From Diadema antillarum (taxonomy: Eukaryota): a stretch of 64,000 nt of DNA. The notes under the pieces are model-generated. The model had not been told where the DNA came from. It ran no database searches and worked only from the letters and a program-made list of their open reading frames with translations. Position 1 is the first letter of the stretch. Every line of letters starts with the position of its first letter. The position numbers and the translations under genes are program-made. Below are positions 24,189-47,050 of the stretch, piece after piece. The DNA lies in contig NW_027272492.1 of assembly GCF_040938485.1 (NCBI RefSeq), positions 124,001 to 188,000 on the forward strand. Reading direction: 5' to 3'.

Positions 24189-25147
24189 AAAGAATGAACA
24201 ACAACATATATTGTTGCACAAATGTTGGTTGATCACAACAGCCTGGCAAGCCAGAGGGTAGAGGGTTTTGATTACTAGACAAACGAGGTACCAATATCTT
24301 AGTGGTGGGGTTCACAGAGGGGAATCTCCCATATACAGATATGGACGTCTACTGTGTCCCTTCCCCTGCACCTGGGCCCCAGGGCCCTCTTAAGTGGCCC
24401 AAAAATGGCCTCAAAGTAAACATTCTAAGTACCACATCAAACCAAGTGGAAACTCAAGAGGCCACCTAGAGGGATACCAAGATTTCTCCAGAATGCCATC
24501 AGACTAGATTCCTGCATGCTTCCTTGGAAGACCAGTGGTCACTGTTATTGACACCCCCTCCATTCATTCCTCCTCTGACATCCGTACCCCATCTGTTTTC
24601 CAGCAACCCCTTGATCAGTGTTTTAGAACCCCCATGATTCATCTTAGGATTCTCCCTCCAGCCTTTAGCCCCAGTAGCCAATGTCCAATTGTTAGTGAAA
24701 CTGGTCAAGTCCTGCAAAATGCCCCTGCTGGTGTTAGACTATGTTGGTGTAATAAAACTCAAGGAGATTAGAGTAGAGAATGCCCTCCTTCTTGCAAGAG
24801 GTGTAAAAACTGTGCCAACAGAAATGTTTGCACTGACAATGTCAGAGCTATATTCCACTTTACTTGAAGTGTTACTATTTAAAAGACGGGATGATTCCGA
24901 TACAGGGGAAACATCGCTCCTCTGTGAATTTGAAGATGCAGTTGCTATGTTAGGATTGCAAGCACAGATTGTCATCCCAGTAGATGGGGAGACAATGTGC
25001 AGAGTAGTGCGGTTGGACGGTTTAGAACCAGTCAGACGAATTAGGGTCAGTGTCAAGGACCTGAGGGAGAGAGGTTTAGTGAGGGAATGGAGAAAAGCAG
25101 GACGTAGAGCTCAGGAAGTTCAGTCTGAAGACATCCCTACTATACTA

Positions 25148-26758
25148 ACAAGGCAAGTGCCAAAATGTGTCTCGCCAATTTGCATAGAAAAAAAATTAAG
25201 TTTTTCTAACTCCTGGAAGTTCATTGACCCTGCCTATGACCTTTGACCTTGTAATGACTTTCAACTCCCCAAGGGACATTTACCAGCCAAGTTTGGTCAC
25301 AAACAGACATAGGGATCAAAAGTTATGAGCTGTAATCGAAACGCGCCATAAAAACTTAACATTGGGCCATGTAAGTTTATTGACCCCTGCCTGTGACCTT
25401 TGACCTTGAGGTGACCTTCATGTTTGGTAAAATGTGTAAATTTGTACATGTATAACCACTCTTCCCTTCAAGTTTGATTGAAATTGAAGTCCTCAGGAGA
25501 GAGTTATTCAAGTTTTTGTAGCGTTACGGACGGACGACGGACGGATGGACGGACAGACGCCGCAGGCGATCCCTAAAGCAGGGTACCTACTTAGCCAAGT
25601 TACAGTGCCGAGCTTTGGCGAGTTGTGGCGAGTTGCCTCAAAGGGGCACACGCAATAACTCGCGTAAAGCTCTTCATGTAACTCTGGATAACTCGCGACA
25701 AGTCAGCACGACTCGGCGTAACTCGTAGTGAATCTGCAAAACTCCCCGTGAACTCGCGAGTGGTTCCAAAATTTTTAAACATGTTCAAAATTTTCCCTAA
25801 CTCAAAGTAACTCGTGCTGAACTTGTTTACACTCGTAATATACTCGTACTACTCGTAACAAACTCTCAATACTTGTACGAGGTTCGCAATGAACTCTTCG
25901 TAACTCGCCACCTTTAAGTATATACGCGAGTTCTGCTCGAGTTTTGAAGAGCGCGATACAAGCACTACGACTCTACTACCAGTATGTGCAAGGGGGAATT
26001 GCCCTCGAGCTAAGCGCGAGTTTAGATCGAGCTCTGCGACTTACGAGCTTTGTATTAGCTTATTCAAAGTGCATTGCACTGACCTATTAATATGAAATTA
26101 TTCACATTTTTCCAGCGTTTTCAAGACAGAAGACATTCATTTAACCCTAAACGCACATGCACAAATATGTCATTGCCATTACATTTCTAGAACTACGTAA
26201 AAATTAAGACAAAAAACATGCCTCGGCTCAAGAAATCCAAGAAAAAAACAGGTGAAGGAAATGGCGATCAATCAAACAATGGTAGAAGTAGAGGTAGAAG
26301 AGCAGGAAGAGACAGTAGAAACAGAAGAGATCATCCGTGATGAGCTACAGAGGCAGTCAGAAGGCCAATCCTCTAAACAAGACCCACAAGACCAGGTCCC
26401 AGTAGAAGAAAATGGGAGAAAAGACCCCACTGGAGGCCAAACCTAACAGCAGGGATTGCGTGAACTTATAACGGGCTCGTAACGGGCCCGTAATAAGCTC
26501 TTACACAAGTCATACACAGGTCATCATAACTCACACCTGGATCGGTGTGACTTGTATCACGCTCGGACCACTCGTACAGCTATCGTAGTAAACTCGATGT
26601 TGATTCGTAGATCACTCATGCACAGCTCATTAAAATTGACAAATTTCACATGAGTTCAAGTGAGTTCAAGCTCATGCAGCTCGCACAACTCGAGACTCCA
26701 ACTCGGCTAAGTGGGAACCTTGCTTTAGTCTACCCTCACCTCCGGTGGGCTCGACAAT
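25148..26758 (+). mobile_element. Pearl/HINE-like (Helentron-associated) element, interrupted by a MITE
   Basis: TGACCTTTGACC monomers, (GGAC)n tract at ~25528-25556, 3' tail resuming at 26728 (gtctaccctcacctccggtgggctcgacaat); removing it restores gag ATA CTA|AAC CTT in frame. Confidence 0.65.
25576..26725. mobile_element. Non-autonomous TIR element (Harbinger-like termini) with AACTCG subterminal repeats
   Basis: TIR aagcagggtacctacttagccaagtt / revcomp aagcaaggttcccacttagccgagtt (4 mismatches), TA on both flanks, many aactcg/cgagtt motifs, short basic/acidic ORF remnant at ~26218-26446. Confidence 0.7.
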
Positions 26759-27263
26759 AACCTTCCAACCCCTTCCCCTGGCAGCAGTGAACCATCCCTT
26801 TCCTTCCCTGATCAAGACATTCCAGTTTTAGCAGCTTCACTAGCACAGAGTGGGCTGACCACAGGGTCTCGGAAACTTCAATGCTTCCCCAGTGAAAAGA
26901 CGGCAGAGCGTGATGAGGATAGCTACCCCATCTGGATAGAGCACGTTGAGAGCAAGATGGAGGAGTGGCAGACTCTGGATGATGCTGAACGGCGCAAGCG
27001 CATTCGTGAATCATTGCATCCACCTGCATCGAGTATCATTACCCACCTGAGGTGTGAGAACCCCCAGGCTTGTTCTGCAGACCACTTCTGGGCTCTGGGT
27101 CTAGTTTTTGGTGACACCGACACAGATGATGAGCTGTTTGTCAGATTTCATCAGGCAGTCCAGGCAGAAGGCGAGTCCCCTTCCGAGTATCTCTTTCGCC
27201 TGCAGGAAGTTATGCATTATGTGGTTAGGCGAGGAGTTGTATGCAGCAAAAGAGATGTGAGTT

Positions 27264-28964
27264 ATGACTGATAATAACCCATTAACATATGTCCTGATGT
27301 CGACGAAACTCGATTCCACAGGGCATATATGGCTCGCCGCACTTTCCTGTTTTGATTTCTCCATTCATTACAAGCCAGGGAAGGCTAACATTCAAGAAGA
27401 TGCACTGTCACAGAAATCACATCCAATCAAGGAGTTTGAGGATCACCAGCAATGCAAGATCAGTGATCTGGAGGCAAGGCTGCATAAGACAAGACGTCAG
27501 GCTCAGGTAAGAAAGTGTCCAATGACTCGGTCTTCTGTCAGTCACATTACCGGGTATGTAGCAGCCGACTCTCTGCATACAAGCAAGCCATACGCTGAGA
27601 CCCTGTGTGCCAGTGCAGAGTCTACCTCAGGTTTGTATGCAAAAGGCTCAGACCTAAATGTAGTAGACTGGGCACAGGCTCAAGAGGCAGACCCTCATTC
27701 GGAACTTGTTAGGGATTATGCTGAATGTGGTGAGAGGCCGCAGTCCTATACCGATACCGCTCTTTCAAAAGAGCCTGCCCTAATACTCTGTGAGTTCGAT
27801 AGGCTAGTTCTGTGCCAAGGAGTGCTTTGCAGAACTTTCACCGACTCCTTGAGCAACCGCCATCACCAGTAAGTATTGGCTGCCCAGCGCCGTGTCGAGG
27901 CAATGAGGGGCATACATGACAGTGTTGGTCACCTTGGGATCGAGAAGTCCATAGCGTTGGCTAGAGATAGATTCTACAGGCCAAAGATGAGTGCTGACAT
28001 CATGGAATGGGTCAAGCACTGCCCTTGCTGTGTTGCAAGAAAGACTCCTCCAAAGCCATCAGCCCCAATGGTGAGTATCCACACAACCAGCCCCCTGGAA
28101 CTGGTCTGCATGGACTTTCTCCCCCTTGAACCAGACCGTTCAAATAAGAAGTCTATCTTGGAAGTGACGGATCACTACACGTGATATGCACAAGCCTTCC
28201 CCACAAAGGACTAGAGTGCTGTCACTGTTGACACGGTCCTGTGGGAGAACTTTGTGCATTATGGTCTGCCCCAGCGCCTTCATTCTGACCAAGGTAGGGA
28301 CTTTGAAAGCAAGGTGATTCATAAGCTGTCAAGGCTCCTTGGCATTAAGAAGTCTTGGACAACTCCTTACCACCCCCAGGGAGACCCTCAGCCTGAGCAT
28401 TTCAACAGAACACTACTGGACATGCTGGGGACCCTGGAAGAGGAGAAGGCAAATTGAAGCAAGCATGTAAGTGCACTTGTACACGCTTACAATTGTTCAA
28501 AGAATGACAGTACTGGTTTCTTGCCTTATTTCGTCATGTTCAGCAGGGAGGCTAGGCTGCCTGTTGATCTGCGATTTGGCACTAGCCCTGACAATTTCAC
28601 TGGGACTGACCATGTGAAGTATGTCAATGGTTTGCGTGATCAGCTTACGCAGGCATATAAGCTTGCGTCAGCCGCATCCAACAAGTCTGCCAGTGCCAAC
28701 AAGGTCCGCAATGATGCGAAAGTGCAAGCCCATGGTCTGAAGCCTGGCGATTGCATCCTTGTTAGTAATGTTGGACTGACGGAAAAGCAGAAGCTGGCTG
28801 ATAGGTGGTACGCAAACCCTCATGTCATCAAAAAGCAACTCAACCCTGATATGCCGGTTTACGAAGTTGCACCTGAAGACGGGGCTGGTAGTACATGCAC
28901 CCTACACCACAACCTTCTCCTACCCATAGAGAACTTGAATGAGGCCCTGTACCCAGAAAGTTAG
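27264..28964 (+). pseudogene. Gypsy pol remnant: RNase H C-terminus and integrase
   Basis: ORF fragments 27264-27872, 27876-28184, 28254-28457, 28521-28964, separated by in-frame stops. Confidence 0.9.
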
Positions 28965-29899
28965 AGTGACTGGGATGGCTATTGCCCTTGGTCAATGTTG
29001 AGACTTTGTCTGACCAAGTGAATAGTCAACTGCTCAGTGTAATTATTATGTGCGTGGAGCATTATTTCCCCTCGAACTATGAGATATTTGAATGGGAGTC
29101 ACAAATGTTTGGCGACCCAAATGAAGCAATGATACTGCTGGGTCGATCAGATACAGATCGAAGCTTTAACTTTGGCTGCAGTATTGCCTCAAATTCAAAC
29201 ATTAAAAAGAGGTCAAATTGAAGAGAAATTATATTGATCATAAACACTTGCATGCATATTATACTACAATTGTATGTCAAAATGAATTGACAAATGTTTG
29301 AGTGTATATGGTTGAATTGATCTCTGAACTGTCTGATGCACTCATAAATACTATGAGGCAGGCATGTAAAGACAATGTACCAGATCTGATTTTGGAGTGG
29401 ATTTTCATACTCCTGAAGAAATATATTCTTGATTGGAAAGACATTGCACTGGAAAAGTCTGGTGTCTTGTAAACTCTTTTAACTACAATGTATATATACA
29501 GTATTTGGACGAGAGATTTTGGCCAGCCTTTGTCTGGTTCAGCGTGGCCGACGGCTACTGAGTATTGCACCGGCTTCCATATACAACTGGTTTGCGACCA
29601 CTCTGGAAGCGTCAACAGGATAGCCGGCAAGAGAGAGAGAGAGCAACGAGTTTAATGATCATCATACACTGGCAAATATTTAATTATATTACATATAACA
29701 AAGGTTACAATTGAGTCTGTAAACGAATTTGAGTGAATGATGTGCTTTGTTGAATGATGAACAAGCTAATAAAGTTTGTCATTGGATTATCTTGTTAAAA
29801 CTTAATCCCAGACGTGATATTTTTTATGTATGGACTTGGGAATGCAACATTCGGGTTACAATTATTTTCCAGGAAAAAAAAAACACACAAATGAAGCAT

Positions 29900-32735
29900 G
29901 TGATAATTTGTGCATCATTTGCAAGTCAAAGGAAAGTAGTCCACTGAAGACATTTTCTGACAAAATATGGGACGCATTCAAGAATGCAACATAATTGAGG
30001 CATCTGATGAAATCAGATCTGTACAGGAGCATAGCACCATCCTAGGTGTTATGAAAATTTCACTGCTGTGAAAAGACCAACCCCCAAATCACAATGTGAA
30101 CATCCATCAAAAAGACAGGCCACTCCAGGAAGAAGTCCAATACCTTCATCAGATGGAAGGGGATTGCTGAAGGGCACTTGCATCTTTTGTACTGTACTTT
30201 TGGACCGTCAAGAGAAAAGTAGAGCTGCTCTCACATTGCCTCAACAAGGATGGGTGCAAGGCAATCATTGATGCTGCCCCCCGTAGCAACAATGACTGTG
30301 TAAAGGTTCTAGTTGCCAATGGAGTTGACTTCATAGCCAAAAGATGCCCCAAACCACAAATTTTGTCGTCATGACTTCTTCAAGGAAGTTGAAGAGGTTT
30401 CAAAGCATGAAGTCTTCATTTGACTGCTTTTGAATCAATAGCACGCCTCATTCAGACAGAGCTCATTGGCAATGGAAGGGCAATGCTCTCAACATCAATC
30501 ATGGAATTATACAAGACAGAGTTTCTAAGTTGGAAGAAACAACAGAAACCCTGGAGAGCTACATGTTGTACACTGTTCAAGCTCTGATGAGAAAAATACA
30601 GGACGAGTTTGGAGACAAAATCTCCATATCAAATTTTGACCACCGAAAGGGCAATTTCGTTTACAATTCTGCAATGTCTGAAGGTGATGCCCGAGCAAGT
30701 CTCAGTTGTGATGATGAGAAGCATCTGCATGCAATACACATGGTTGCATTTTATCTTCGAGCAGTGATTAAGGCATTGTCCAAGTGGGAAACTTGAACTC
30801 CAATAATTTATCTATTGCAGCCCTGAAAGCCTGTTACCAGAGCTACCAGAGGAACTGTTGCTGTTCTACAAAACACTCTTTTGTGGCCTTACAGAATCTT
30901 TTGGGGTGATGCAATGACATGCAAAGGAACAGCCATGTCCTCAGATGCTGTGTACAACATGTCACGAGGTGCAGTATGGCCATGGAAGCATACAGTACTT
31001 GGATTGGGAATTGGAACTATGACTGGGTGCAAAGCGGCACTCCGCATCCTGAATCGTCTCGGACATTCGCTGAATTACAACGAAGTCAAGGCATTGGAGA
31101 CCGAATATGCATATCTCAGTTGAAAATGACAGAGATAACACTGATACGATGACACTCAATCCCGACCTGGGTACAGGGCTTACATGGGACAACTCCGATG
31201 TGAACATGGATACCCTTGCTGGTATAGACACATTGCATGCTACAGTCGGGATCTGCTATCAGAACATGCATGATTCTACACCGGCATCTAATACTGATAA
31301 CAATGAGCTTTGGTAAAAAGAAACCTCACTTCCATGTTAGGAGGAACAGGCAACAATTTGATGGAAAAGAACACAACATCCCACCATATTACAAGAAGCT
31401 TAAGAATGCTAGCTTTGAGCTATCAGCATATGAAGACCAGGAAAGAGCAAATGTACCACCTATGTGCAGTCTTTACTTTCACTGGCTACTCTGATCAGAA
31501 GTCGGCAAGCATTTGCCACTGTTTCCCGGCTTTTTCTCGAAATTCACCATGGATCATTTGCCTCAACAACAAATCTGCTACATGGACCCAATATCTGCCC
31601 CACCAACCAGAAATGTTGTTGTCCATGAAACCATGATGAGGACAACGGTGGAGGCCACTGAAACTTAGCAAGGCTATGGAGTTGTAACATATGACTTGGC
31701 TGTAGCTCTGAAAGCTAAACTCAATCCAAGCACTGGATGCACCTCTTTTTGACAAGTTTCTCATCATGCTTGGGAATTTCCACCTTGAATCAGCTTTCTT
31801 CAGTGCCATTGGTACTTTCATCAATGAGAGTGGGGCACAGCATCTCCTCACAGAATCAGAAATACTGGCTGAAGGATCTCTGATTGGATTCATTCATGGG
31901 AAGTACTACAAGCAATGTGTATGCATCCATGATATCCTCGCTGTTGCTATGGAGAGAAAGATCTATGAGAGCTTCATGGCAACCCTCACACATAAGAGAC
32001 AGGGCGTAATCAAGGACCTACTTGCAGTTGTTCCAGAGGATCCAAATAACCAGAAGCGATTTCTTGATACAAGTCAACCATGCCAAGAGCACATGTATCA
32101 GTATGAGATGTTCTTCAAGGACTTGATGACTGGGAAACCTGGCCTAACTGCCTAGTACTGGAGAATGTACGTGTTCATGATAAATTGAGTTCACAGAGCC
32201 CTGATGTGTGCAGTCCGTTTGAATGACATTGATGAGTACATCAAAATACATGTACTGCCAGTTGTAATAGACATCTTCTTTGGATTGACTCAGCCAAACT
32301 ATGCTCATTGGGGAGTGTTCTTTCTGAATCAGCTTATGAGTGCAGTACTCAAGAGCCCATCGATTCTACAGTCAGGGACCTTCTCCATCCGAAGAACTGG
32401 ACAAGACTTTGCTAGATCACCCATCGGTTTGACCTCGGAGCAGAGTGTAAACAGAGATGCAGCATCACCATTGTAGAAGGGCATTGTAAGCTCCCACAAC
32501 TCAAACAATGCGATCAGACGACGGTGTATCACGTCAGCTCAGAGAGGCATGTCCATTACAGAGCTCCGCAACATGGAGGATTGGAGGCAGAGGAGCATCC
32601 AGCAGCACAGCTACGACCCATCAGAATTGAGGATGATAGCACCTAGAGCGATGCATTGACTAGACAAATGCTATTACAGAAACATGTGACCCTTTCTCTT
32701 CTCCTGCAACATCATCTCCTTGTCTTCTCAACATA
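29900..32735 (+). pseudogene. Academ-like transposase, 5' part (many stops and frameshifts)
   Basis: Recognised motifs across frames: LLKGTCIFC; VDFIAK.DA.NH.FCRHDF; TMTGCKAALRILNRLGHSLNY; LTWDNSD..TLHATVGICYQN; VVTYDLAVALKA; MLGNFHLE..AIG..ESG..GKYY; PNYAHW; GTFSIRR...F....GLTSEQSVNRDA; CDPF...LLNI. Family membership is from memory; start is approximate. Confidence 0.75.
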
Positions 32736-33746
32736 GGGTGCGTTTATCAATTATTTTTTTCGGCAGAAACAGGTTTTCAAAACGGCTTTCAGGGATTTTT
32801 TAGAGATAAATGCAAAGCCGTTTTGATTATGGGCTTTGGAAAGCCTTTTTGAAAACTGCAAATTGGGCTTTTCGAAACACGTTTCAGCCAGAAACCCTTT
32901 CTAGAAGTGAGATAAACACAAAGCTGTTTCGAAACGACTTTGTACTGTGGTTACGAACCATGTGTTTTTGATCTCTGAAAAGACGCGTGCCACACCACGT
33001 ACATGTGTAAACACCACACACAGCACAGTGGCGGATCTGGGGGGGGGGGGGTTAGGGGGTTTAAACCCCCCCCCCCCCCCCCCCCTTGGGCTGCCAAGTA
33101 AAAAATATAATGTGCATAGGAAAACACCACCATAATGTCCAGACGCATACAATATGTTCCTGTAGCACTCTGTCTCAGGCTCAGCCTCGGGCAATAGGTT
33201 TTAACCCCCCCCCCCCCCCCCACTACCAAGTGAACATGTGTTAATTTTTCTATGCACATCACTGTGATGCGCACAGAAAAACGCCACCACGTATCTAGAC
33301 CCATTTATGATGCAGTGCGCGGCGCAAGCATGTAGCACTGATGACGGTGCGCGTATTGCATCGGATGCATGCAGTGCGCGCGCGTATTGTATTGATGCAG
33401 GTATGTATTGCACATTACATACACGCCGGCCTAGCGCTATCGCCTATCGACAAGCGTATGTTCCCGGGACCCTTGCTCATCAACCAGCTCATCAACTTTG
33501 TGATTAATCATGGAAATTCACGTCCCCAAAAAGAGAAAGCAAACGTCTGTGAAAGACTTTTTCAGGTAAGCCTACACTGGCTACAGTACATTACTGTGCA
33601 ATTGTATTTTGACAGGCGAATGCGAATGCAAAATGAGGTGCGTAACGGTATTATGAAGTGCGTATTCGCTCGTGCAAGGTGAAGTGAAAGCATTTCGCAC
33701 CTGCGTGTTGGGTAAAATACAATAGCACAGTAGCCTAGGCCTACTG

Positions 33747-33925
33747 CAGGGCTGCCAACATTGGAAACTAGTTGAGAGTGAGATTCCCATAGGCCAATGA
33801 TATAATACAGGGATCAAAATGAGTGAGATCAACAGAAATGCATGCAAATGAAATACATGTTAGAGTGAGAAACTGGTCCAAAATGAGTGAGTCTCCTTCT
33901 TAGTGAGTGAGATTTGGCAGCCCTG
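33747..33925. mobile_element. MITE in hAT intron 1
   Basis: TIR CAGGGCTGCCAA / TTGGCAGCCCTG, internal GAGTGAG repeats; no TSD resolved. Confidence 0.65.
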
Positions 33926-33963
33926 TAGTTCTAACGTTACTCTACAAAACTATATATCCCAAC

Positions 33964-34177
33964 CACTGACCTAAAAGTAAAAGCATGGACGGGAGGTGGC
34001 GTATGCGAAAGATGATGCCAATCACAGCAGCTTTTCAGCCACCGTAGGACCATGAACGCCGACAATGGGCGCATGCGTGCTGCGAAACGCATATTGTCAT
34101 GGTCCTAACATGGCGGTGGCATCACTTTTGTTCGCAAATCAGCACGCACGCCCCCCGTCCATGGTTTTAGGTCAGTG
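33964..34177. mobile_element. CACTG-ended MITE in hAT intron 1
   Basis: TIR CACTGACCTAAAA / TTTTAGGTCAGTG plus internal CATGGACGGG / CCCGTCCATG inverted pair. Confidence 0.65.
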
Positions 34178-34189
34178 AAGGCAGGGAAT

Positions 34190-34635
34190 CGGGGCTGCCA
34201 CTCAAAATTTTCATTTCCCCTACGCCACATGCGTATTTTCCCCTACGGACACCATTTTCCCCCTACGCCCTTGCCTAAAACCCCATTTTTCACCTACGAA
34301 ACCCAGTTTTCCCCTACAAAAAAGACTTTTCCCCTACGGAGCTAAGTTTTCCCCTACAAATAACCTTAAAGTAGTAAATGATAGTTGCCCCCGGGTAGTT
34401 GCCGAGGAATTTTCAATGTGTGTTCGCACTGGAGAATGCGAAAATTCTTTGAAACCCTTTGAGAATTGAGGGGTATTTTTTAAACTTGCCCACAAAATTG
34501 AAGAAAAGTTTCAGAAACATCAAATCCCCCTACTTTCCCCTACGGAAGATCATTTTCCCTGTAGGTATCCCCTACTACCTACGGAGGTCCATTTTCCCCT
34601 ATGGTAAGGGAATTCCCCTACGAGTGGCTGCCTTG
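34190..34635. mobile_element. MITE with about ten TTCCCCTAC subterminal repeats in hAT intron 1
   Basis: Degenerate TIR cggggctgccactc / gagtggctgccttg; repeated ttcccctac motif. Confidence 0.55.
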
Positions 34636-34697
34636 AATGAAGTAGTCGAAACTAAGCGATTCCCCGGCCGTTTTAAATTTTCCATTCACTTTGTATA

Positions 34698-34996
34698 CAG
34701 TGGCGTAGATTTGTCTGGAGGAGTGGGGGGATGACTGCGAGAGAGCGAAGTGACCAAGCGGGGGAGGAGGTAGGAGGGAGTGTCCCCCCTCCACGGTAGG
34801 AACTTTTGGCAAAAATTAGTCACTCATACACCATTTTAATCAGGTTTTACAGCTAAATCCCCCCCCAAAAAAAATCAGCGTTTTATCATGAAAAGTGTGG
34901 GGGGGGGGGGTGATTGTACAGGCCATCCCCCTCTCTTCCAAATGTGGGGGATATTATATCCCACATCCCCCCCCCCCCCCCCGATCTACGCCCGTG
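34698..34996. mobile_element. hAT-type MITE with 5-bp TSD in hAT intron 1
   Basis: TIR CAGTGGCGTAGAT / ATCTACGCCCGTG; GTATA at 34693-97 and 34997-35001. Confidence 0.8.
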
Positions 34997-37659
34997 GTAT
35001 ACAAAAATGACAGAAATGTCATTTTCAGCTATGATAAAGTGAGACTTCCCTAAATCTTCTCTGAATAGATGTAGAATTATGTTAACTCCAATAGTCTGTT
35101 AAAAATGTGCACACGTAAAGTCCGATGTAAACTGTAAGAAGAGTAAAATATTTAAAAAATTTTTAATTTTTAATTCATTTTGCAAATTTATTCATAAAAT
35201 CAAATTTTTGCTTGTAATATTTCTGATACAAAGTTATGGAAAGCTATTTTATGGTCAAAATATACTTTGTAACATTTCTATCAATTATCTCAGTTACAAT
35301 AAAGTTGCCGCACTGAAATTATTTTTTAATGTTTTTTGTTTTGTGAATTTTGTACGTATTTCTTTGTTTTTTACCTTTTGTTTTTGTTGTTTTTTAGCAA
35401 AATTTATCACAAATAATTTTGAAGCATACATTATGCTAAAAAATTAATTACAGCCATTAAAACTGAATATGAATTTTTATGAATTGTAAAAACAATTTAC
35501 ATTGAGTTTGTACTCAAAATCACATTTTTGAGCAATTTTCGGGTTAATGGATTTGTTTTGTGGTTTATGAACAGTATACGCGGGTGCGACAAATTTAGTT
35601 TCTAAAGATGCGAGATACTTAAACGAAAGAGTCATGAAACGTCCCGGCTGTGTCATGTCGCTTTGCGAACTACCACTACTACCTAGGGTTAAACCTGTTC
35701 TGGAGTTCCCCTTTAATAATATTCTTAAAATTTCTTAAATGCCTGATCTGTCTTCTGTTTATTTGTACTTTGCAGATGTGCGCCGACTGTAACTGAACTT
35801 AACCTGCACTCGGACATTCCTGGTGATGGGACCACCCCCACTGTTACTGATCACAGTAATATGCTTCAAGACAGTGGTTCAGTACCCCCGAGTGACCCAA
35901 CCCAGGCTAGCAGCACTACAAGAACAGAGGTACCATACCACTGGGACATTGGGTTGTTGGTGTCGGGGCAGTCGTCTGTTGTCACTGACAGTGATCGCTA
36001 TCACTACTTAACACATAGCTACCAAGGACGAGAGTTTGCAACATATGAGGTCACAAAGAAGGGCAAGCGAGTCCCGCTCACCTTTCAAGAGTCATGGCTC
36101 AAAGACTATGAGTGGCTTTCATACTCCCATTCACAAGGTGGAGGCTACTGCAAGTACTGTGTCTTGTTCCAAGCCAAGTTGGCCAAAGGGGTGCTTGGAA
36201 CCCTGGTGAAGACCCCATTCAAGAATTTCAGCAAGGCCAAAGGCAAAGATGGCATTCTCACACTACATGATGCATACAAATACCACCATGAGGCAATGGT
36301 GATGGGAAAGGCATTTCTGGCAACATACACCAACCCTGAAGCCAGAATTGACACCATTCTCGACAAAAAGGGCCAGGCGCTCTCCGATAAGAACATGCAC
36401 ATCCTCTCAGTGATTGTAAATACCGTCAAGCTGTGTGGCATGGAGGCCCTACCGTTACGTGGTCACAGAGATGACAGAACAGCAGACCCGCTCACCAACC
36501 GAGGAGTCTTCACTGCAATTCTAGAGCACGCTGCCAAATGTGATCCGATCCTCCGGGAACATTTGGAGGAGGGAAAGAAGAACCAACAGTACACATCAAA
36601 AACGATACAGAATGAGATCATTACTGTCATTGCGGACTGCCTGCGTGACAACATCTTGGCACCTCTGAAACACGTGAAATACTTCAGCGTCATTGCTGAT
36701 GAGGTGACCGATCCACACGGAAATCAAGAAGTACTGTCACTATGCTTGAGGTTTGTGGATGTCACTGATACGAAGCCTCACGTCAGGGAGGTCTTCCTGG
36801 ACTTTCTTCATCTACAGAGGGCGACTGGTAAGAGGATTGCAGAATCCATCTTAAGCCTCCTCGACAAGCATGGCCTTGATGTTCAGGATATGCGTGGGCA
36901 GTCATATGATGGAGCGTCTGCAATGGCTAGTGACAAAAGAGGAGCTCAGGCCGTGATCAAAGAGAAGAACCCACTGGCGCTGTACACGCATTGCCGCTCA
37001 CATGTTCTGAGCTTGGCCATTGGCAAAGCATGCAAAGTAGAAGTACTACGCAACATGATCGACGTGATTAATGAGATCCATCTCTTCTTCCATCTGTCTC
37101 CGAAATGACAACGCTTCCTGGAAACGATACTCGGCACCTATGCACCAGAAAGCCGCGTTCAAAAACTCAAAGGGCTCTGCAAAACGAGATGGACAGAGAG
37201 GCACGACTGTCTGGAAATATTCCGTTCTCTTTATGAGTACGTATTCACATGCGTACACGCCATGGTGCAACCAGGTGAATATGCAGAGATCGAGTCATCG
37301 TGGGATTGGGATGCTGAAACCCGTACCAGGGCTCAGGGATTCATGGCCTCTCTCAGGAATGGCCGCAACATCATAGCCCTGGTCATTCTGGTCAATGGTC
37401 TGGATACGGTGAAAGGCCTGAGCACCAAACTCCAGAAGAGAGATGCTGATGTGGTTGCCGCCTACAACCTCATCGACACAGCTATTGATGAGGTGAGAAG
37501 AATGAGAGCGGACTTCGACTCGGTCTGGAGGAACTGGTGTACAGAGGCCGAGAGGATTGCTGCTGATGTTGGGGGAGAGATCGCGGTCCCTAGAAGAGCC
37601 AAGCACCAGACACACCGTGCAAATACTCCAGCTGACACAGCCAGGTTTGTATTACTTTA

Positions 37660-37830
37660 TTGTATCTCCCGAACAGAGTTCGGAATCGGAGGGATACTAT
37701 GGATTTGGCCTCGTCACACCGCCGAGTCCGCGGTAGATATATTTTATTGTGAGTGCTGTACTGGCCACATTTCTTCTCGGATTAACTTCAAATTTGGCAT
37801 GGAGGTGCATTATGGTATGCTTTAGTTATA
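37660..37830 (-). repeat. HINE-like fragment in hAT intron 2
   Basis: Terminal hairpin (tctcccgaac...gttcgg...gagggat) followed by a ttcaaatttggcatg monomer motif. Confidence 0.4.
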
Positions 37831-38307
37831 AAAAAATACATTTAGTTAGTACATTAATGCTCGTTTAAAAGTCATATCATGGCATGAATGGGACGGGGCT
37901 ATTTATGTAGCGTACAGTTTCCACACAGCTACCATTATACCTTTCTTGTAATGCGCCTTAAACAGAGACAATATTCTGATGGTGTCACCAGTGTCTCAAA
38001 CCTTTGCAATGTTCGTATTTTGCAGTGAAGTACTACAAGAGAACTGTTGGGATTCCTTTCATGGACAGCTTTCTACAGGAGCTGGGCGACAGGTTCTCGG
38101 CTGACAACCGTGCACTGAAGTCAATCATGTCACTCGTCCCTCTGGTGATGGTAGGGCTCGCGGATGCCGAGTCACTGGCTGAGGATCAGCTCTTCTGGGA
38201 GAAGGATCTCTCTTTCCCCCTGGCCCTGAAGGTACGATATGACACTTTACATTTAACAGTGAAAAGGTGGTGGAGATTGTGCAGATATTGTATAAAATGA
38301 ATCTTAA

Positions 38308-38687
38308 AGGCACTGTATAACAGTGTTTCCAGTTAAAAAATCTGAACTTCATGATTCCCCATGCTACCAGTGTCTTAGATGAGGTCTAAGAATGAAGCCC
38401 TGAAAAAATTGCAGTTCAAAATGATCATTAAGTGCATTTGAACAGTGAAAACCACTGAGAGACCATTCCAGTTTTCCCCATAGACTGCTGTGTGGTAGAT
38501 TTTGAGTCCACCCCGGACGGGTAAATCATGTGCTCTCAATCGGTACACAATTTGTTAGTGACAGCTGAACTGTCTAAATTTATGTGTTCTAGGGTGATTC
38601 TTGGTCCAATTTAACACTAACATATGTGTCAGATAGCAAAGTTTGATACTTTTTTAAATGGGGATTCCACAATGTTATACAGTGGCT
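38308..38687. mobile_element. Kolobok-like MITE (TTAA target) in hAT intron 3
   Basis: TTAA|AGGCACTGTATAAC ... GTTATACAGTGGCT|TTAA; purine-purine termini. Confidence 0.75.
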
Positions 38688-39332
38688 TTAATATACGTTT
38701 ATTTCTGTATTTTTTTTTTTTAATTTTGTGCTTTCAGAGAGAGCTGGTACGCTGGAAGAGTTTCTGTACGGCACTCTGTCAGAAAGGTGACGTCCCTGAC
38801 AATCTGGTCGACACCCTGCCACTAGCTGATGGTGACGTCTTCCCCAACATCACGGAACTGATCTTAGTTGGCTGCACGTCACCAATCGGATCCTGCGAAG
38901 CTGAGCGTTCATTCAGTGCCCTCAGACGTGTGAAGACATACCTCCGTTCCACCATGACAGAGGAGAGACTGGCGGGCCTCACCTTAATGGCAGTACACTT
39001 CAGACATGCAGCACAGCTAGACAGAGGTGGTCAAGCAGTTCGTCAGGGTTAACCCAAGGCGACTCCTGTGCAACTCCATCCTATTTGACTAGACCACATA
39101 TTGTCGATGGGCTTATAAAACCTCGTATCTCAACATTTTGTGAAAATGACTTTTTTGCAGAAATATGAAGTTTAAAGGTAAATGATATGATTGGGAGAAA
39201 TAAAAAATGCCTTGAGAACCAAACTTGCTGAAAGACGTACCAAAGATACACCAGCTGTAGTGTACCTCATGGCTGGAAGGATTAACATTTGTCTTGAAAT
39301 TGTTTACATTAGGAGAATCGAGCATTAACATA

Positions 39333-39842
39333 CACTGTTGGTCATAAAGGTGGAATATTTTTGTTAGTTTCAATCCTTCCACTTAAATCATTGTAATTTG
39401 AATACTTTCAGAGCATTAAAGATGATATTTGGACACAATGTTATTTAATAGTTTTTGCTGAGTTTAGATGAAACACCAATGGTGTAGATCATTTCATGCT
39501 TCACTGAGCACTGGTTTTATCCAGTCACAACAATGTGGATGATGGTGCAAAAGTTTTGTGCGCCCCGTTCTGCACACTTGCGAAAAATTTATAATTTTCA
39601 ATGTTCCAATTTTTTTCTTTCTCTTTCCTTAACGTAAATCATAACTTGAATGATTTTTTTCATGCTTCGCTGAGCACGCAAAAATGGCTTATTGGAGATA
39701 GGACATTTACAAATCTGCCATTAATTATTAAATAACATTGTGTCCAAATATCATCTTTAATGCTCTGAAAGTATTCAAATTACAATGATTTAAGTGGAAG
39801 GATTGAAACTAACAAAAATATTCAACCTTTATGACCAACGTG
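39333..39842. mobile_element. Tc1/mariner-type MITE with ~120-bp TIRs
   Basis: TA|CACTGTTGGTCATAAAGG... arm 39333-39450 is the near-perfect reverse complement of 39723-39842 ...CCTTTATGACCAACGTG|TA. Confidence 0.85.
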
Positions 39843-41058
39843 TACCAACAACATTGAGAAAGTGTCATTCAATGACACAAAGAGATCCCATAAAAACGTA
39901 CACAACTGTCGCAAGTATACTGATGATAATTCTTACCTAATGAGTTCACATCTGACCACAATTTTTTCACAGTAGAATCCTTGCATATAGTTTACTTGAT
40001 TTTATGTGAAGATCGAAGATCGAAATAAATTGTATGATTGTAGCATAACAAGTGGCACCTGTGAAAAGTTTGTTTATTTGAGTCTCAAATTTTATGCACA
40101 ACCTTCAATTGGCTGAATAAGCAACATTTAGTTCTACTTAATTTTCATTTCTACTTCATTGGCCTGAACTCCAGTATAATCAACATCGCAGAGTTTACTT
40201 TAATTTAAGAGTTGTGGTACTATACAATTCAACATACGTTACACTGTCTTAAATCTACCTTTTTATCACGTATCTTTCCCAGTTACTTTTCATTTGTATC
40301 TCATGTTGTTAGAGTTAGACCAAAAAGAAAGAACGCACACTAGAGGGAAAACAATTCAAGGGCAAATACTGTGTGAAGATATAATGATATTCAACTCATC
40401 TGGTAATTGATAACCAAACACATGATAACTCTGGATATAACTGTGTTCTAAACTGTTATTTGATCTTATTCTAATAAGACGTAATATCATGGACTGCTTT
40501 TTATGTTCTCCATTACGTTAGTAGATGCCAGGAAAACATCACTTACGGGGTTCAAATAGCTAAAAAAAAAAAAAAATTGGCGCGACGCCACGCAGCTCAC
40601 AGACATCGCCTTGTGGACGATGCTCTGCATCGCCATTGGGACATCACAAACCCAGGGACCGCGGAGCCAGGGTCGGCAAAAAAGATAAAAAATAGAGCAT
40701 GCAAGTATGCTTAAAATCGCAAGCTGGAACCCTAAAAATGAAAATCTCCCTACTGTGGGAGGGGGGATACCCCCCTCCCACACCCTCCCCCCCCCCCTCG
40801 CTCGCTTCACTCGCTTGGGCTTGGTCGCTACGCTCCCTCGCAATACCCAGCTCAGCCCCTCAAACCCCCCCCCCCTTGGAAAAAAGCTAGATCCGCCCCT
40901 GCAGCACAACGTGTATTATGGGAATTTGTGCATGTCTTGTACACAGTATAATACTGTAATACGTACTGTAGCATAGACGTTTGTTTGTTTGTTTGTAAGT
41001 TTATTTTCTGTATTGATTGCTTTTCTCTAACCAGGTATTTATAGTTTTGACTGCAGAT

Positions 41059-41268
41059 ATGGCTACTGAAGGTGCCAATTGGGCACCAGAGGACATGAGG
41101 TGACTGCTGCTTTTGTAGGCAGAACCCAAGGTTCAACATAAACTGAAATCGAAGGTCCGAAACAACTCGGAGCTTGCCCATGCTGGGTATACACCCAGGG
41201 ATGGCCATTCTTGTAGAGACAAAATAAACAGAATACAAAGGGAATATAGGGCCATTCACGACGACTAG
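41059..41268 (+). pseudogene. Harbinger Myb/SANT-like DNA-binding protein remnant
   Basis: MATEGANWAPEDMR*LLLL*AEPKVQHKLKSKVRNNSELAHAGYTPRDGHSCRDKINRIQREYRAIHDD*, trihelix/MSANTD pattern W..E...LL..W.E...GY.R....CR.K...YR; stops explicable as CGA>TGA and TGG>TAG. Confidence 0.7.
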
Positions 41269-41477
41269 CCAAAAAAGCGCGCACCGTATATGACCCCTTC
41301 TCCTCGCGTCAAATGGCGCAATGCAGCTGCGCAGTGACAAGGCCAGTTTTCGAGTTGGCAATGAGTTTAGAAATGCAACTTCTTTTGAGGAAGGCGTTTG
41401 TAAAGGGTTTTGGAAACGACTTTTAAAAGAGGGTATAGAAAGCCGTTTCAAACTGGAGAAAGATGATAAATGCGGCC

Positions 41478-41577
41478 AGAGCCACAGGCAAATCAACATC
41501 CTAGGAAACTCAGAAGTATTTAACCGGAAGCCTTGTTGCTGGCCACAAATTTCATATGAAGTTTCAGGATAAATGCA
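41478..41577 (+). pseudogene. Academ-like transposase, 3' continuation after the Harbinger insertion (truncated at the TIR)
   Basis: (AGA)GCC ACA GGC... reads ATGKSTS*ETQKYLTGSLVAGHKFHMKFQDKC, continuing in frame from LLNI at 32735. Confidence 0.65.
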
Positions 41578-42826
41578 CTACTCAGATATTGGTACCTCGT
41601 TCATCTAATCAAAACCCTCTGGGCTGCTGGGCTACAACATATGACAGGATGAATTTTAACTACACTCAGTATCACACAGAATGTAACAAATTAGTCAACT
41701 GAAATGAAATTTTCAAAAGCCAGTACTGTTTTTTCTTTTAAGTACGACATGTGTATTTTCAACTGAATGTGAGCATGAATAACACAAATTTACTTTTCCA
41801 CTGCCACGTAGTGCTTTATACCACACTCATGAATGTTTGACAAACTGGAGATGTTACCCAACTCACAGCAATAACACCCTGTAGATATAACGTAAAACAA
41901 AGTGTGTTTATCAAGTCAGTCAGGTCTCCATACAGTTCTGGATCTGTTGAATAATTACCCTCAATACACTAATCCCTGGCACAATTACTATAACTATATT
42001 ATTCTCTTCCAGGGTATCGCATGTCTCGTCACTCCCACGTATGTCTGAAATAAAGCAAGTTACTGTTGTACACCCTGTTTTCCATTGAACTTATATTTTC
42101 ACTCATTTAGACAGTGTGTCTGTCATCTTAAAAAATCTCAGCTCTTTGATGTATTAGCAAATCTAAATTGATTCGGTAATTTCATTCTTCTACTAGTGAT
42201 TATAGACTTGATGTTTTCCTGTCATAAAATGAGCACACAATTCATGTCTTTAGAGCTGGTGCCCTGAATTGACATGATCCTCTGAATGAATTTACCTGAT
42301 TTGGATACTGACTTGAAATGATAAAAAAAAAACCCACCAAAAACTCTGATAATTAGACTCACTATAGGTACTAGTATATGGTGTGTCCTTCTGTTATGTC
42401 CTTTAACTATTTACTGGTCGAACCCTCATCTGACAAAATAAAGGCCAAAAGAGTTTTTTAAAATAATGTGACTGGTCCATGAGTACTTCAAACCACAAAA
42501 CTGTTTGGAAATATGGTTGCTCTGGATTTGCAGTGCCGAATATAATCCATGCACATCCTTCATCACTGCAGAAGAGCACATTTTCTCTTATTTTGAGAAG
42601 TTGCTCTGGACATACTGTTCGAGCTCTGCTGTATTTGCTATTACACCATGACAAATGCTAGTTGTAGCAAACTCTTGGCCACTTGTACTGATAACATTCT
42701 CACTGAGGCATGGACTGTCACTTAAGACAGGTCACATGACCTGTCAATCTATCGCACAAAACTCTACCAATTTGGCCATCTGTCTTCTTCATTTGGTGTA
42801 AAGTCACATAACCTTCCCTGGTGTCC

Positions 42827-46913: not shown

Positions 46914-47050
46914 NNNNNNNNNNNNNNNNNNNNNNNNNNNNNNNNNNNNNNNNNNNNNNNNNNNNNNNNNNNNNNNNNNNNNNNNNNNNNNNNNNNNNNN
47001 NNNNNNNNNNNNNNNNNNNNNNNNNNNNNNNNNNNNNNNNNNNNNNNNNN
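46914..47050. other. Assembly gap (N run) upstream of POLR1D
   Basis: Run of n. Confidence 0.99.

What the first reader, a model, noticed from the sequence alone, without database searches (positions are those of the whole stretch)
24239..41634. 17.4-kb four-tier transposon 'Russian doll' enclosed by an Academ element
Seen: ~60-bp imperfect inverted repeats at 24239 and 41634 (terminal 21 nt 16/21 identical, with a shared aacgaggtaccaatatct block), YAG..CTR termini and a 3-bp CAA duplication. They enclose everything from a Gypsy remnant to a hAT. Nesting reconstructs as Academ > Harbinger > hAT > MITEs and Academ > Gypsy > HINE > MITE. Several junctions restore the interrupted reading frame or TSD on excision. 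Decay follows nesting order: the outer ORF is heavily disrupted, the inner hAT has three lesions. Known: AcademX elements make 3-4-bp TSDs and are among the least characterised superfamilies. Inference: this is one old Academ copy that became a TE sink for about six superfamilies between two housekeeping genes.
Basis: partly seen in the sequence, partly recalled or inferred. Interest (0 to 1): 0.75.

Follow-up and report, generated by a model that had tools for sequence, protein, structure and literature searches.

The report
Old Academ transposon packed with transposons
This 17.4-kb stretch is one old, broken DNA transposon of the little-studied Academ type that later took in five more mobile elements, some nested inside others; it is a clear but ordinary example of transposon nesting in a repeat-rich animal genome.

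Summary
A gapped inverted repeat of about 60 bp sits at 24239 and 41634, with CAG..CTA termini and CAA on both flanks. Its arms belong to a real transposon family with at least 19 matches per arm in this 1.75-Gb genome.

The family's other copies also show 3-bp target-site duplications. The closest coding relative is a 14-kb element present in two 98.9 %-identical copies. It carries near-identical terminal bases and encodes the protein whose wreck lies at 29.9-32.7 kb.

That protein family is a DDE transposase core fused to a C-terminal nuclease. The core's best fold matches are the P-element and Hermes transposases. The nuclease's best matches are EXO1, Rad2/XPG, FEN1 and T5 flap endonuclease. 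This is the published AcademX layout, with the published 3-4-bp duplication length.

Two nesting junctions were verified. Removing the hAT (33026-40901) restores a Harbinger-like MITE. Removing that MITE (32736-41480, one duplication copy included) restores the conserved N-I-A-T-G motif of the Academ reading frame.

Corrections:
- Only about 3.3 kb of Academ remains, and its nuclease part is deleted.
- The Gypsy lacks its 5' LTR, so its junction cannot be tested.
- Two of the three short elements inside the hAT are also in a sister copy, so they arrived with it.
- No empty site was found.
- The "housekeeping genes" claim was not borne out.

The scan had already noted Academ-type elements elsewhere in this genome.

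The parts
24236..24238 (.). Left copy of the 3-bp target-site duplication (CAA) of the outer element
   Evidence: It matches 41635-41637.
24239..24466 (+). Left arm of the Academ-type element: a TIR of about 62 bp plus subterminal sequence
   Evidence: Positions 24260-24466 are 71-82 % identical to about 12 other copies. All of those copies lose homology with the window at 24459-24467 while continuing among themselves. That marks a breakpoint at this position.
24467..29860 (+). 5'-truncated Ty3/Gypsy remnant. PNMA-like gag at 26729-27268, RNase H tail and integrase at 27261-28961, 3' LTR at 29027-29860. Protease/RT and the 5' LTR are missing.
   Evidence: Pfam hits: PNMA 1.9e-23, Integrase_H2C2 2e-15, rve 3.9e-7. 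Positions 27237-28947 are 82-88 % identical to more than 20 copies. Positions 29027-29860 are 76-80 % identical to about 40 copies, arranged as LTRs in 9.39-kb arrays. No second LTR lies within the interval.
25147..25571 (+).
   Evidence: More than 3,500 first-look candidates, 87-90 % identical, all starting at 25122-25148. No tRNA head was found. Its 3' end was not resolved.
25572..26727 (+). 1.16-kb TIR element inserted at the tail of the SINE-like element
   Evidence: Genome copies 86-90 % identical share the boundaries 25572-25576 and 26724-26730. Inverted ends were read.
29861..32735 (+). Academ internal remnant. ORF1-like part at 29911-30341. Transposase part at 30554-32735, matching residues 52-344 and 555-967 of the 1363-aa relative.
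   Evidence: tblastn against the C895 protein is collinear at 36-56 % identity, with several in-frame stops and at least 4 frame changes. The DN.D, VVTYD and EQSVNRD catalytic motifs are still readable.
32736..33025 (+). Left part of a Harbinger/Tourist-like MITE (TIR GGGTGCRTTTATC). Its flanking 3-bp duplication is ATA at 32733-32735.
   Evidence: Short genome copies join 32731-32947 directly to 41277-41481. Their 3-bp duplications include CTA/CTA and ATA/ATA.
33026..40901 (+). 7.9-kb hAT element. Ends are CAGTGGCGGATCT...AGATCCGCCCCTG. The 5-bp duplication CAGCA lies at 33021-33025 and 40902-40906. Transposase pieces lie at 35747-39049.
   Evidence: Pfam hits: DUF4371 3.2e-19 and Dimer_Tnp_hAT 1.6e-7. 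Locus L040 carries the empty site, with 33030 joined to 40902. Sister copies are 99 % identical in protein and about 95 % in gapped DNA; the C1005 copy has the duplication GTGAA.
34698..34996 (+). MITE-like insert with hAT-type ends and GTATA on both flanks, inside the hAT
   Evidence: Read. It is present at 92 % identity in sister hAT copy L061, so it was carried in with the hAT.
38295..38700 (.). Short inverted-repeat element between hAT coding pieces
   Evidence: Arms of 32 nt are 84 % complementary. It is 99.4 % identical in sister copy L061.
39337..39839 (.). Foldback element with 117-nt arms, 98 % complementary, in the hAT 3' part
   Evidence: The same region is rearranged in sister copies.
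40902..41477 (+). Right part of the Harbinger-like MITE. The degenerate second duplication copy AGA lies at 41478-41480.
   Evidence: An ORF finder reports a 241-aa frame here, but it is a repeat with more than 1,000 candidates and has no Pfam match.
41481..41579 (+). Last surviving piece of the Academ reading frame, matching residues 968-1000 of the relative and running straight into the right TIR
   Evidence: This piece alone gives E 4e-4. Across the excision junction, one 54-residue alignment (E 3e-9 on a small local set) restores the conserved N-I-A-T-G motif.
41576..41634 (-). Right TIR of the Academ-type element
   Evidence: It is 84-94 % identical to the termini of other copies, whose matches start exactly at base 41634.
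41635..41637 (.). Right copy of the 3-bp target-site duplication (CAA)

Best explanation
Window 24239-41634 is a single ancient insertion of an AcademX-type cut-and-paste DNA transposon, flanked by a 3-bp CAA duplication. The steps below are inferred from sequence unless marked as shown.

How such elements move (inferred from the family's protein). They encode one large protein. Its centre is a DDE (RNase H-fold) transposase and its C-terminus is a FEN1/XPG-like 5' nuclease. The transposase binds the TIRs of about 60 bp (TAGYCCGG.AGCC...GGTACCAAT) and makes staggered cuts 3 bp apart in the target.

State of this copy (shown). Its frame carries stops and frameshifts. The region after residue ~1000 is deleted, nuclease domain and 3' subterminal DNA included. 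The first ~50 codons are also lost.

Later insertions into the dead element.
1. A Ty3/Gypsy retrotransposon landed near the left arm. It has since lost its 5' LTR and its protease/RT region. Its gag region took in a SINE-like element and a 1.16-kb TIR element.
2. A 0.87-kb Harbinger-like MITE landed inside the transposase frame (shown by frame restoration).
3. That MITE was later hit by a young 7.9-kb hAT with a 5-bp duplication (shown by an empty site in another copy). The hAT already carried at least two of its three short internal elements.

That is at least five later insertion events at this locus. The structure reaches four tiers, but only three tiers on the hAT branch were built here.
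For: TIR and duplication.

Real family, exact termini.

3-bp duplications in four of the five copies with both ends readable: CAA (window), CTA (L007), AAT (C895), TGT (C1651).

Link between TIR and protein. The 14,040-bp elements on C895 and C1651 (98.9 % identical, different flanks) end in TAGTCCGGGAGCC...GGTTACCAAT, against the window family's TAGCCCGGCAGCC...GGTACCAAT. They encode the 242-aa and 1363-aa proteins to which window 29911-32735 and 41481-41579 align collinearly.

Protein identity.
- The central domain model (pLDDT 78) is closest to P-element transposase (Z 10.8, 292 residues aligned) and Hermes (Z 8.3).
- One D, one D and one E are invariant in all 15 aligned members.
- The C-terminal domain model (pLDDT 80) matches EXO1, Rad2/XPG, FEN1 and T5 flap endonuclease at Foldseek probability 1.0.
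- A paper states that AcademX encodes a nuclease and makes 3-4-bp duplications (PMC10045372).

Nesting. L040 joins 33030 to 40902. MITE excision restores LLNIATG across 32735|41481.

Relative ages. The hAT is 95-99 % identical to sister copies. The other layers are 66-94 % identical to their relatives.
Against: - No Repbase or Dfam comparison was possible. 'Academ' therefore rests on domain architecture, duplication length and taxon range, not on direct homology to named Academ transposases.
- By sequence, Pfam sees only a weak DUF6589 match and no XPG model.
- The window copy itself lacks the nuclease domain.
- No continuous Academ DNA joins the left arm to the coding part. A truncated Gypsy lies between them.
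- By eye, the left arm is more diverged from the family's common terminus than the right arm: about 8 substitutions and 2 indels against 2 substitutions in about 60 nt.
- A 3-bp flank match arises by chance 1 time in 64.
- One family copy (L004) shows no matching duplication.
- No empty site was found.
Confidence: 0.8

Rival explanations
1. The two arms come from two separate insertions. One is a short non-autonomous copy or solo arm on the left. The other is a truncated coding copy on the right. They happen to lie in inverted orientation with CAA beside both, so the 17.4 kb is a TE pile-up rather than one enclosing element.
For: Short copies of 1.3-1.9 kb exist in this family. The left arm ends in a breakpoint at 24466, followed by a truncated Gypsy, so nothing physically links it to the coding part. 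The arms differ in divergence from the family terminus. A 3-bp match is weak evidence.
Against: - The arms are in the correct inverted orientation, and family-defined termini sit exactly at both ends.
- The flanks have identical 3-bp sequences.
- The right arm is fused to the 3' part of the frame, and the frame points towards it.
- Coding sequence resumes only about 50 bp after the Gypsy LTR ends.
- The genome-wide protein search found no other coding remnant of this subfamily; the next best hit is 42 % identical.
Confidence: 0.12
2. The outer element is a single copy but belongs to another superfamily with 3-bp duplications, such as PIF/Harbinger, CACTA/EnSpm or Zator, or to an undescribed one. 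It is not Academ.
For: No direct comparison with curated Academ sequences was possible. Pfam gives only a weak DUF6589 match. The fold search of the core shows a general P/hAT-like DDE fold that is not specific to one superfamily.
Against: - The termini are not CACTA, and the duplications (CAA, CTA, AAT, TGT) are not the TWA typical of Harbinger.
- No DDE_Tnp_4 or other named transposase domain was detected.
- To my knowledge, a single protein joining a DDE transposase to an XPG/FEN1-like nuclease has been described only for AcademX. PMC10045372 links that nuclease to 3-4-bp duplications.
- Close homologues occur in sea urchins, crustaceans and cnidarians. From memory, Academ has been reported in such animals.
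Confidence: 0.06

Closest known systems
AcademX lineage of the Academ superfamily (Kapitonov & Jurka 2010, Repbase Reports; Kojima 2020, Mobile DNA 11:15; as summarised in PMC10045372)
   Same: Terminal inverted repeats. 3-bp target-site duplications. In related copies, one large protein that joins a DDE transposase to an XPG/FEN1-like nuclease. Found in marine invertebrates.
   Different: This copy is a fossil. The nuclease domain and the 5' end are deleted, the frame is broken, and 14 kb of other transposons lie inside it. Direct sequence comparison with curated Academ entries could not be made here.
14-kb autonomous element in the same genome (C895:218053-232092; second copy on C1651)
   Same: Its terminal bases are almost the same (TAGTCCGGGAGCC against TAGCCCGGCAGCC, plus a GGTACCAAT-like block). 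It makes 3-bp duplications. Its proteins are homologous and collinear with the window's remnant.
   Different: The proteins are only 36-56 % identical. The relative has TIRs of 0.7-0.9 kb built from ~147-bp tandem subrepeats and an extra ~200-residue insert between the first and second catalytic Asp. It is young (98.9 % identity between copies) and its frame is open.
Nested transposon clusters, as known from maize intergenic regions and other repeat-rich genomes (general knowledge)
   Same: Younger elements sit inside older ones. Duplications and frames are restored by stepwise excision in silico.
   Different: The outermost shell here is a DNA transposon of a rarely annotated superfamily rather than an LTR retrotransposon.
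hAT elements with 5-bp duplications (the 'hAT5' naming in Repbase; recalled from memory, not checked)
   Same: DUF4371 and hAT dimerisation domains. CAGTG/CAGGG termini. 5-bp duplications in two copies (CAGCA, GTGAA).
   Different: Classical hAT elements make 8-bp duplications.

Membership tests
Academ superfamily, AcademX lineage | Target-site duplication of 3 or 4 bp | tested here: met
   CAA in the window, CTA in L007, AAT and TGT in the C895 and C1651 relatives. One copy (L004) shows no match. The rule itself is stated in PMC10045372.
Academ superfamily, AcademX lineage | Single large protein carrying an XPG-type nuclease beside the transposase (tested on family relatives) | tested here: met
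   The C-terminal domain model of a family member (L051, pLDDT 79.7) matches EXO1, Rad2/XPG, FEN1 and T5 flap endonuclease at Foldseek probability 1.0, E about 2e-4. The motifs D..D.Y..SIK, HEEADT, DTD and HAFTGCD.TS are conserved. Pfam XPG models do not detect the domain.
Academ superfamily, AcademX lineage | XPG-type nuclease domain present in this particular copy | tested here: not met
   The window's frame ends at the residue equivalent to ~1000 of 1363 and runs directly into the right TIR. The nuclease part is deleted. This describes the state of the copy, not the family.
Academ superfamily, AcademX lineage | DDE/RNase H-fold transposase | tested here: met
   The core model (pLDDT 78.4) gives P-element transposase Z 10.8 and Hermes Z 8.3, followed by Tn5, retroviral integrases and RAG1. 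D, D and E are invariant in 15 members. The matching motifs are readable in the window.
Academ superfamily, AcademX lineage | Sequence homology to curated Academ transposases (Repbase/Dfam) | not testable with these tools
   No TE reference library was available. Database homologues are all 'uncharacterized' proteins. Only a weak Pfam DUF6589 match was found.
Academ superfamily, AcademX lineage | Terminal inverted repeats | tested here: met
hAT superfamily (inner 7.9-kb element) | hAT transposase domains, including the C-terminal dimerisation domain | tested here: met
   DUF4371 3.2e-19 and Dimer_Tnp_hAT 1.6e-7.
hAT superfamily (inner 7.9-kb element) | 8-bp target-site duplication | tested here: not met
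   Two copies show 5-bp duplications: CAGCA here and GTGAA on C1005. hAT families with 5-bp duplications are, from memory, recognised in Repbase. Membership therefore rests on the protein domains.
PIF/Harbinger (0.87-kb MITE, 32736-33025 plus 40902-41477) | 3-bp duplication, usually TWA, with short TIRs | tested here: inconclusive
   3-bp duplications CTA/CTA and ATA/ATA; imperfect pairs TTA/TTT, TAA/TAT and ATA/AGA (window). An 11-13-nt TIR is present. The length fits, but the sequence is only partly TWA.
PIF/Harbinger (0.87-kb MITE) | DDE_Tnp_4 transposase and Myb-like ORF | tested here: not met
   No Pfam match in any frame of 70 aa or more. The element is a non-coding, high-copy repeat. 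As a MITE it can be typed only by its ends.
Ty3/Gypsy LTR retrotransposon (24467-29860) | gag, pol with RT/RNase H/integrase, and two LTRs | tested here: inconclusive
   PNMA-like gag, Integrase_H2C2 and rve are present, and one LTR is present. RT/protease and the 5' LTR are absent. It is a remnant, observed only.

The most novel reading that the evidence does not exclude
The window holds the only surviving coding fossil in this assembly of an extinct Academ subfamily whose short 1.3-1.9-kb derivatives are scattered through the genome. Together with the young 14-kb relative, it shows two things. First, the Pfam-dark protein family (weak DUF6589) is the Academ transposase core fused to a flap-endonuclease-like domain. 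Second, this genome still hosts a possibly mobile member. That would make the unexplained role of the nuclease in cut-and-paste transposition open to experiment.
Probability: 0.45. Interest if true: 0.4.

Novelty: new member of a known kind. Interest (0 to 1): 0.25.

Why it matters
For genome annotation, this locus is a worked example. About 17 kb that automatic pipelines would report as a dozen unrelated repeat fragments resolves into one Academ shell plus at least five later insertion events, in a verifiable order.

More broadly, the Academ protein family is invisible to Pfam apart from a weak DUF6589 match. The fold evidence here is a P/hAT-like DDE core plus a FEN1/XPG-like nuclease. Together with the conserved terminal motif and the 3-bp duplications, it gives practical criteria for recognising such elements in marine invertebrate genomes.

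The nesting itself is ordinary biology and has no evident effect on host genes.

Tried and rejected
- Pfam on all window frames of 70 aa or more: nothing at 29.9-32.7 kb and nothing Harbinger-like.
- Pfam on six further long ORFs of the family: no XPG or any other model. At a relaxed threshold only weak DUF6589 appeared.
- PDB sequence searches, with two single proteins and with a 15-member profile: no hit.
- ESM Atlas: only 'hypothetical protein' clusters.
- The word-index protein search found 37 homologues, all uncharacterised.
- Foldseek on the 551-residue core gave no significant hit. The exhaustive VIA-align search was needed.
- The window's TIR motif is absent from the C895 and C1651 elements as an exact 12-mer. 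The similarity showed only when their termini were read.
- The 241-aa frame at 40855-41577 (minus strand) was rejected as a gene. It is a repeat with more than 1,000 candidates and stop codons in its relatives.
- An 8-bp duplication for the hAT was looked for and not found. The duplication is 5 bp.
- Empty-site searches all failed. Both haplotigs (C1995, C283) carry the filled junctions. The right flank is single-copy, so there is no paralogous empty site. Contigs from the probable source sample bridge 24239, and contigs from another individual bridge 24466/24467; no loose ends were listed at the junction.
- The Kojima 2020 and Yuan & Wessler 2011 papers are not held in the library.
The gag junctions around the SINE-like element were therefore not tested.
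Full report
**Setting.** The window is C1604:124001-188000 of a 1.75-Gb, 2,963-contig animal assembly. The closest database homologues of the proteins studied come from sea urchins, crustaceans and cnidarians. The N runs (46914-47050, 62706-62874) lie outside the finding and were left alone.

**1. The observation.**
- The left end reads caa|CAGCCTGGCAAGCC.... The reverse complement of the right end reads ttg|TAGCCCAGCAGCCC....
- The terminal 21 nt agree at 16 positions.
- An 18-nt block (aacgaggtaccaatatct) is shared.
- CAA flanks both ends (24236-24238 and 41635-41637).
- The ungapped repeat finder reports 32 nt at 88 % complementarity. With two indels the repeat runs for about 60 nt.

**2. 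The arms belong to a real family.**
- Each arm finds at least 19 places in the genome.
- Aligned copies share the terminus TAGCCCGGCAGCCCAGAGGG....GAACGAGGTACCAATATCT.
- Copies with both ends are short: L007 is about 1.45 kb and L004 about 1.87 kb. L007 has CTA on both flanks. L004 has no matching flanks.
- In the window, left-arm homology runs to 24466, while the other copies continue among themselves. So 24466/24467 is a breakpoint.
- Right-arm homology covers only 41576-41634.

**3. What the 29.9-32.7 kb frames are.**
- Pfam sees nothing in them.
- A genome search with the frame at 31712-32152 found long open relatives.
- The best relative is 42 % identical. It is a 242-aa plus 1363-aa ORF pair on C895, with a second copy on C1651.
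- Window 29911-30341 aligns to the small ORF. Window 30554-32569 aligns to residues 52-344 and 555-915 of the large one. The alignment is collinear and crosses several in-frame stops and at least four frame changes.
- The gap at residues 345-554 matches a variable insert that most family members lack. It need not be a deletion.

**4. What that protein family is.**
- Fifteen diverse members align over their length with invariant D, D and E.
- The central 551 residues fold with pLDDT 78 and pTM 0.84. They are closest to the P-element transposase (Z 10.8, 292 residues, rmsd 4.8) and Hermes (Z 8.3), followed by Tn5, retroviral integrases and RAG1. Foldseek alone was not significant.
- The C-terminal 377 residues fold with pLDDT 80 and pTM 0.81. 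Their best matches are all members of the FEN1/XPG 5'-nuclease superfamily: EXO1, Rad2/XPG, T5 flap endonuclease, FEN1, XRN (probability 1.0, E about 2e-4).
- Conserved acidic motifs and an H3TH-like motif are visible in the alignment.
- Sequence methods miss both domains, apart from weak DUF6589 matches.

**5. Link between protein and termini.**
- The C895 and C1651 copies are 14,040 bp long, 98.9 % identical, and lie in different flanks.
- They end in TAGTCCGGGAGCC...GGTTACCAAT, very like the window family's terminus.
- They carry 3-bp duplications, AAT and TGT.
- Four of the five copies with both ends readable therefore show a 3-bp duplication of no fixed sequence.
- PMC10045372 states that AcademX makes 3-4-bp duplications and AcademH 9-10-bp ones, and ties the difference to the encoded nuclease or helicase.
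- A transposase fused to an XPG-like nuclease, with a 3-bp duplication and TIRs, is the AcademX description.
- Direct comparison with Repbase or Dfam was not possible, and the primary papers are not held.
- Earlier notes of this scan report AcademX-type elements elsewhere in this genome. I treat them as agreement, not as evidence.

**6. The right-hand nest.**
- Short, very abundant copies join window 32731-32947 directly to 41277-41481.
- A longer copy, L040, joins 33030 directly to 40902.
- So 32736-41477 is one Tourist/Harbinger-like MITE of 0.87 kb, once its passenger is removed. Its TIR is GGGTGCRTTTATC. Other copies have 3-bp duplications CTA/CTA and ATA/ATA; here it is ATA/AGA.
- 33026-40901 is an insertion into that MITE. 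This is the hAT, with DUF4371 and the hAT dimerisation domain, ends CAGTGGCGGATCT, and the 5-bp duplication CAGCA. A sister copy has GTGAA.
- I removed 32736-41480 in a local script only. The joined letters were not sent to any search tool.
- That excision gives one 54-residue alignment to residues 949-1000 of the relative. It runs straight across the junction and rebuilds the family-conserved motif L-L-N-I|A-T-G.
- The two pieces also match when tested apart: E 4e-4 and E 0.14.
- So the MITE inserted into the Academ frame, and 41481-41579 is Academ coding sequence.
- That sequence runs directly into the right TIR. Everything after residue ~1000, nuclease domain included, is deleted.

**7. The fourth tier on the hAT branch.**
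- Sister hAT copies on C1005 and C755 are collinear with 33025-40901; the window's coding piece 35747-37105 (453 aa, stop to stop) is 99 % identical in those copies and on C1292.
- The C1005 copy, the only one checked for them, also contains the elements at 34698-34996 and 38295-38700.
- The foldback at 39337-39839 is present but rearranged in the sisters.
- These short elements are real nested structures, but they travelled with the hAT and are not events at this locus.
- The sister copies have open frames of 689-697 aa where the window has 453 + stop + 238. Only the stop at 37106-37108 is shown to be private to this copy and its haplotig.

**8. The left-hand nest.**
- 27237-28947 (RNase H tail, integrase) matches more than 20 copies at 82-88 %.
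- 29027-29860 (TG...CA) matches about 40 copies at 76-80 %.
- In arrays with a 9.39-kb period on C447 and C137, that segment sits where an LTR would.
- No second LTR lies within the interval, and protease/RT is absent. The Gypsy is 5'-truncated and internally deleted.
- Part of the Academ 5' region was probably lost with it: Academ coding resumes at residue ~50 of ORF1, only about 50 bp after the LTR.
- Inside the gag region lie a SINE-like element (25147-25571, more than 3,500 candidates) and a 1.16-kb TIR element (25572-26727, 86-90 % copies).
- I could not fetch a full Gypsy copy to test frame restoration here.
- The Gypsy was only described.

**9. Single element or two?**

For a single element:
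- correct orientation;
- exact family termini at both ends;
- identical 3-bp flanks;
- a right arm fused to the 3' part of the frame;
- coding that resumes just after the Gypsy;
- no other coding remnant of this subfamily in the genome.

Against:
- no continuous Academ DNA links the left arm to the rest;
- the arms are unequally diverged;
- no empty site was found.

On the empty site: haplotigs C1995 (96 %) and C283 (99.7 %) carry the same junctions. The right flank is single-copy. Contigs from the probable source sample bridge 24239, and contigs from another individual bridge 24466/7. I put the single-element reading at about 0.8.

**10. Assessment.** The remainder is 228 + 2,875 + 154 = about 3.26 kb of Academ, holding about 14 kb of later arrivals from at least five insertion events. 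The layers' similarity to their relatives fits the nesting order: hAT 95-99 %, all others 66-94 %. This is a new, well-resolved member of a known but rarely annotated superfamily, set in an ordinary nesting pattern. The 'two housekeeping genes' were not confirmed. The flanks gave only a sub-threshold arginyl-tRNA-synthetase fragment at 15005-15337 and a clear rhodopsin-type GPCR ORF at 54191-55432.

Noticed in passing
G000:C895:218053-232092 and G000:C1651:89432-103397 (loci L045/L048, L049/L050): Two 14-kb copies of an Academ-type element, 98.9 % identical and in different flanks. They have open 242-aa and 1363-aa frames, TIRs of 0.7-0.9 kb built from ~147-bp tandem subrepeats, and 3-bp duplications AAT and TGT. 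The element looks recently active.
   Followed up: partly
window 23200-24204: The left flank of the outer element is itself a very high-copy repeat. Contig depth is thousands of times that of the neighbouring sequence. It has TGACCTTTGACC motifs and a (GGAC)n tail, like the SINE-like element at 25147-25571 inside the Gypsy.
   Followed up: partly
G000:C447:646658-694272 and G000:C137:551657-590018: The Gypsy-type element related to the window's remnant occurs in head-to-tail arrays with a 9.39-kb period, at least five units long.
   Followed up: no
window 54191-55432 (+): An intact 414-aa single-exon open frame with a rhodopsin-family 7TM receptor domain (7tm_1, E 9e-35). It is the nearest clear host gene to the right of the cluster.
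   Followed up: no
window 15005-15337 (+): A weak, sub-threshold match to the end of the arginyl-tRNA synthetase catalytic domain (E 3e-4, 20 bits against a cut-off of 23). It may be an exon of a host gene to the left.
   Followed up: no
window 33026-40901, L061 (C1005) and L062 (C755): This hAT family makes 5-bp rather than 8-bp duplications (CAGCA, GTGAA). Its internal MITE-like insert at 34698-34996 has the same end type, with GTATA on both flanks.
   Followed up: partly
Loci L015, L017, L018, L019 (C58 and C261, two places each): Four copies of the Academ-family terminus share the same flanking sequence. They are one insertion multiplied by a larger duplication, not four transpositions.
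   Followed up: no
Protein family of L045, L047 and P0001-P0037: Pfam DUF6589 gives repeated weak matches to the region between the second catalytic Asp and the Glu of this transposase family. L047 scores 28 bits, just above the 27-bit cut-off. DUF6589 may be the Academ transposase core.
   Followed up: partly
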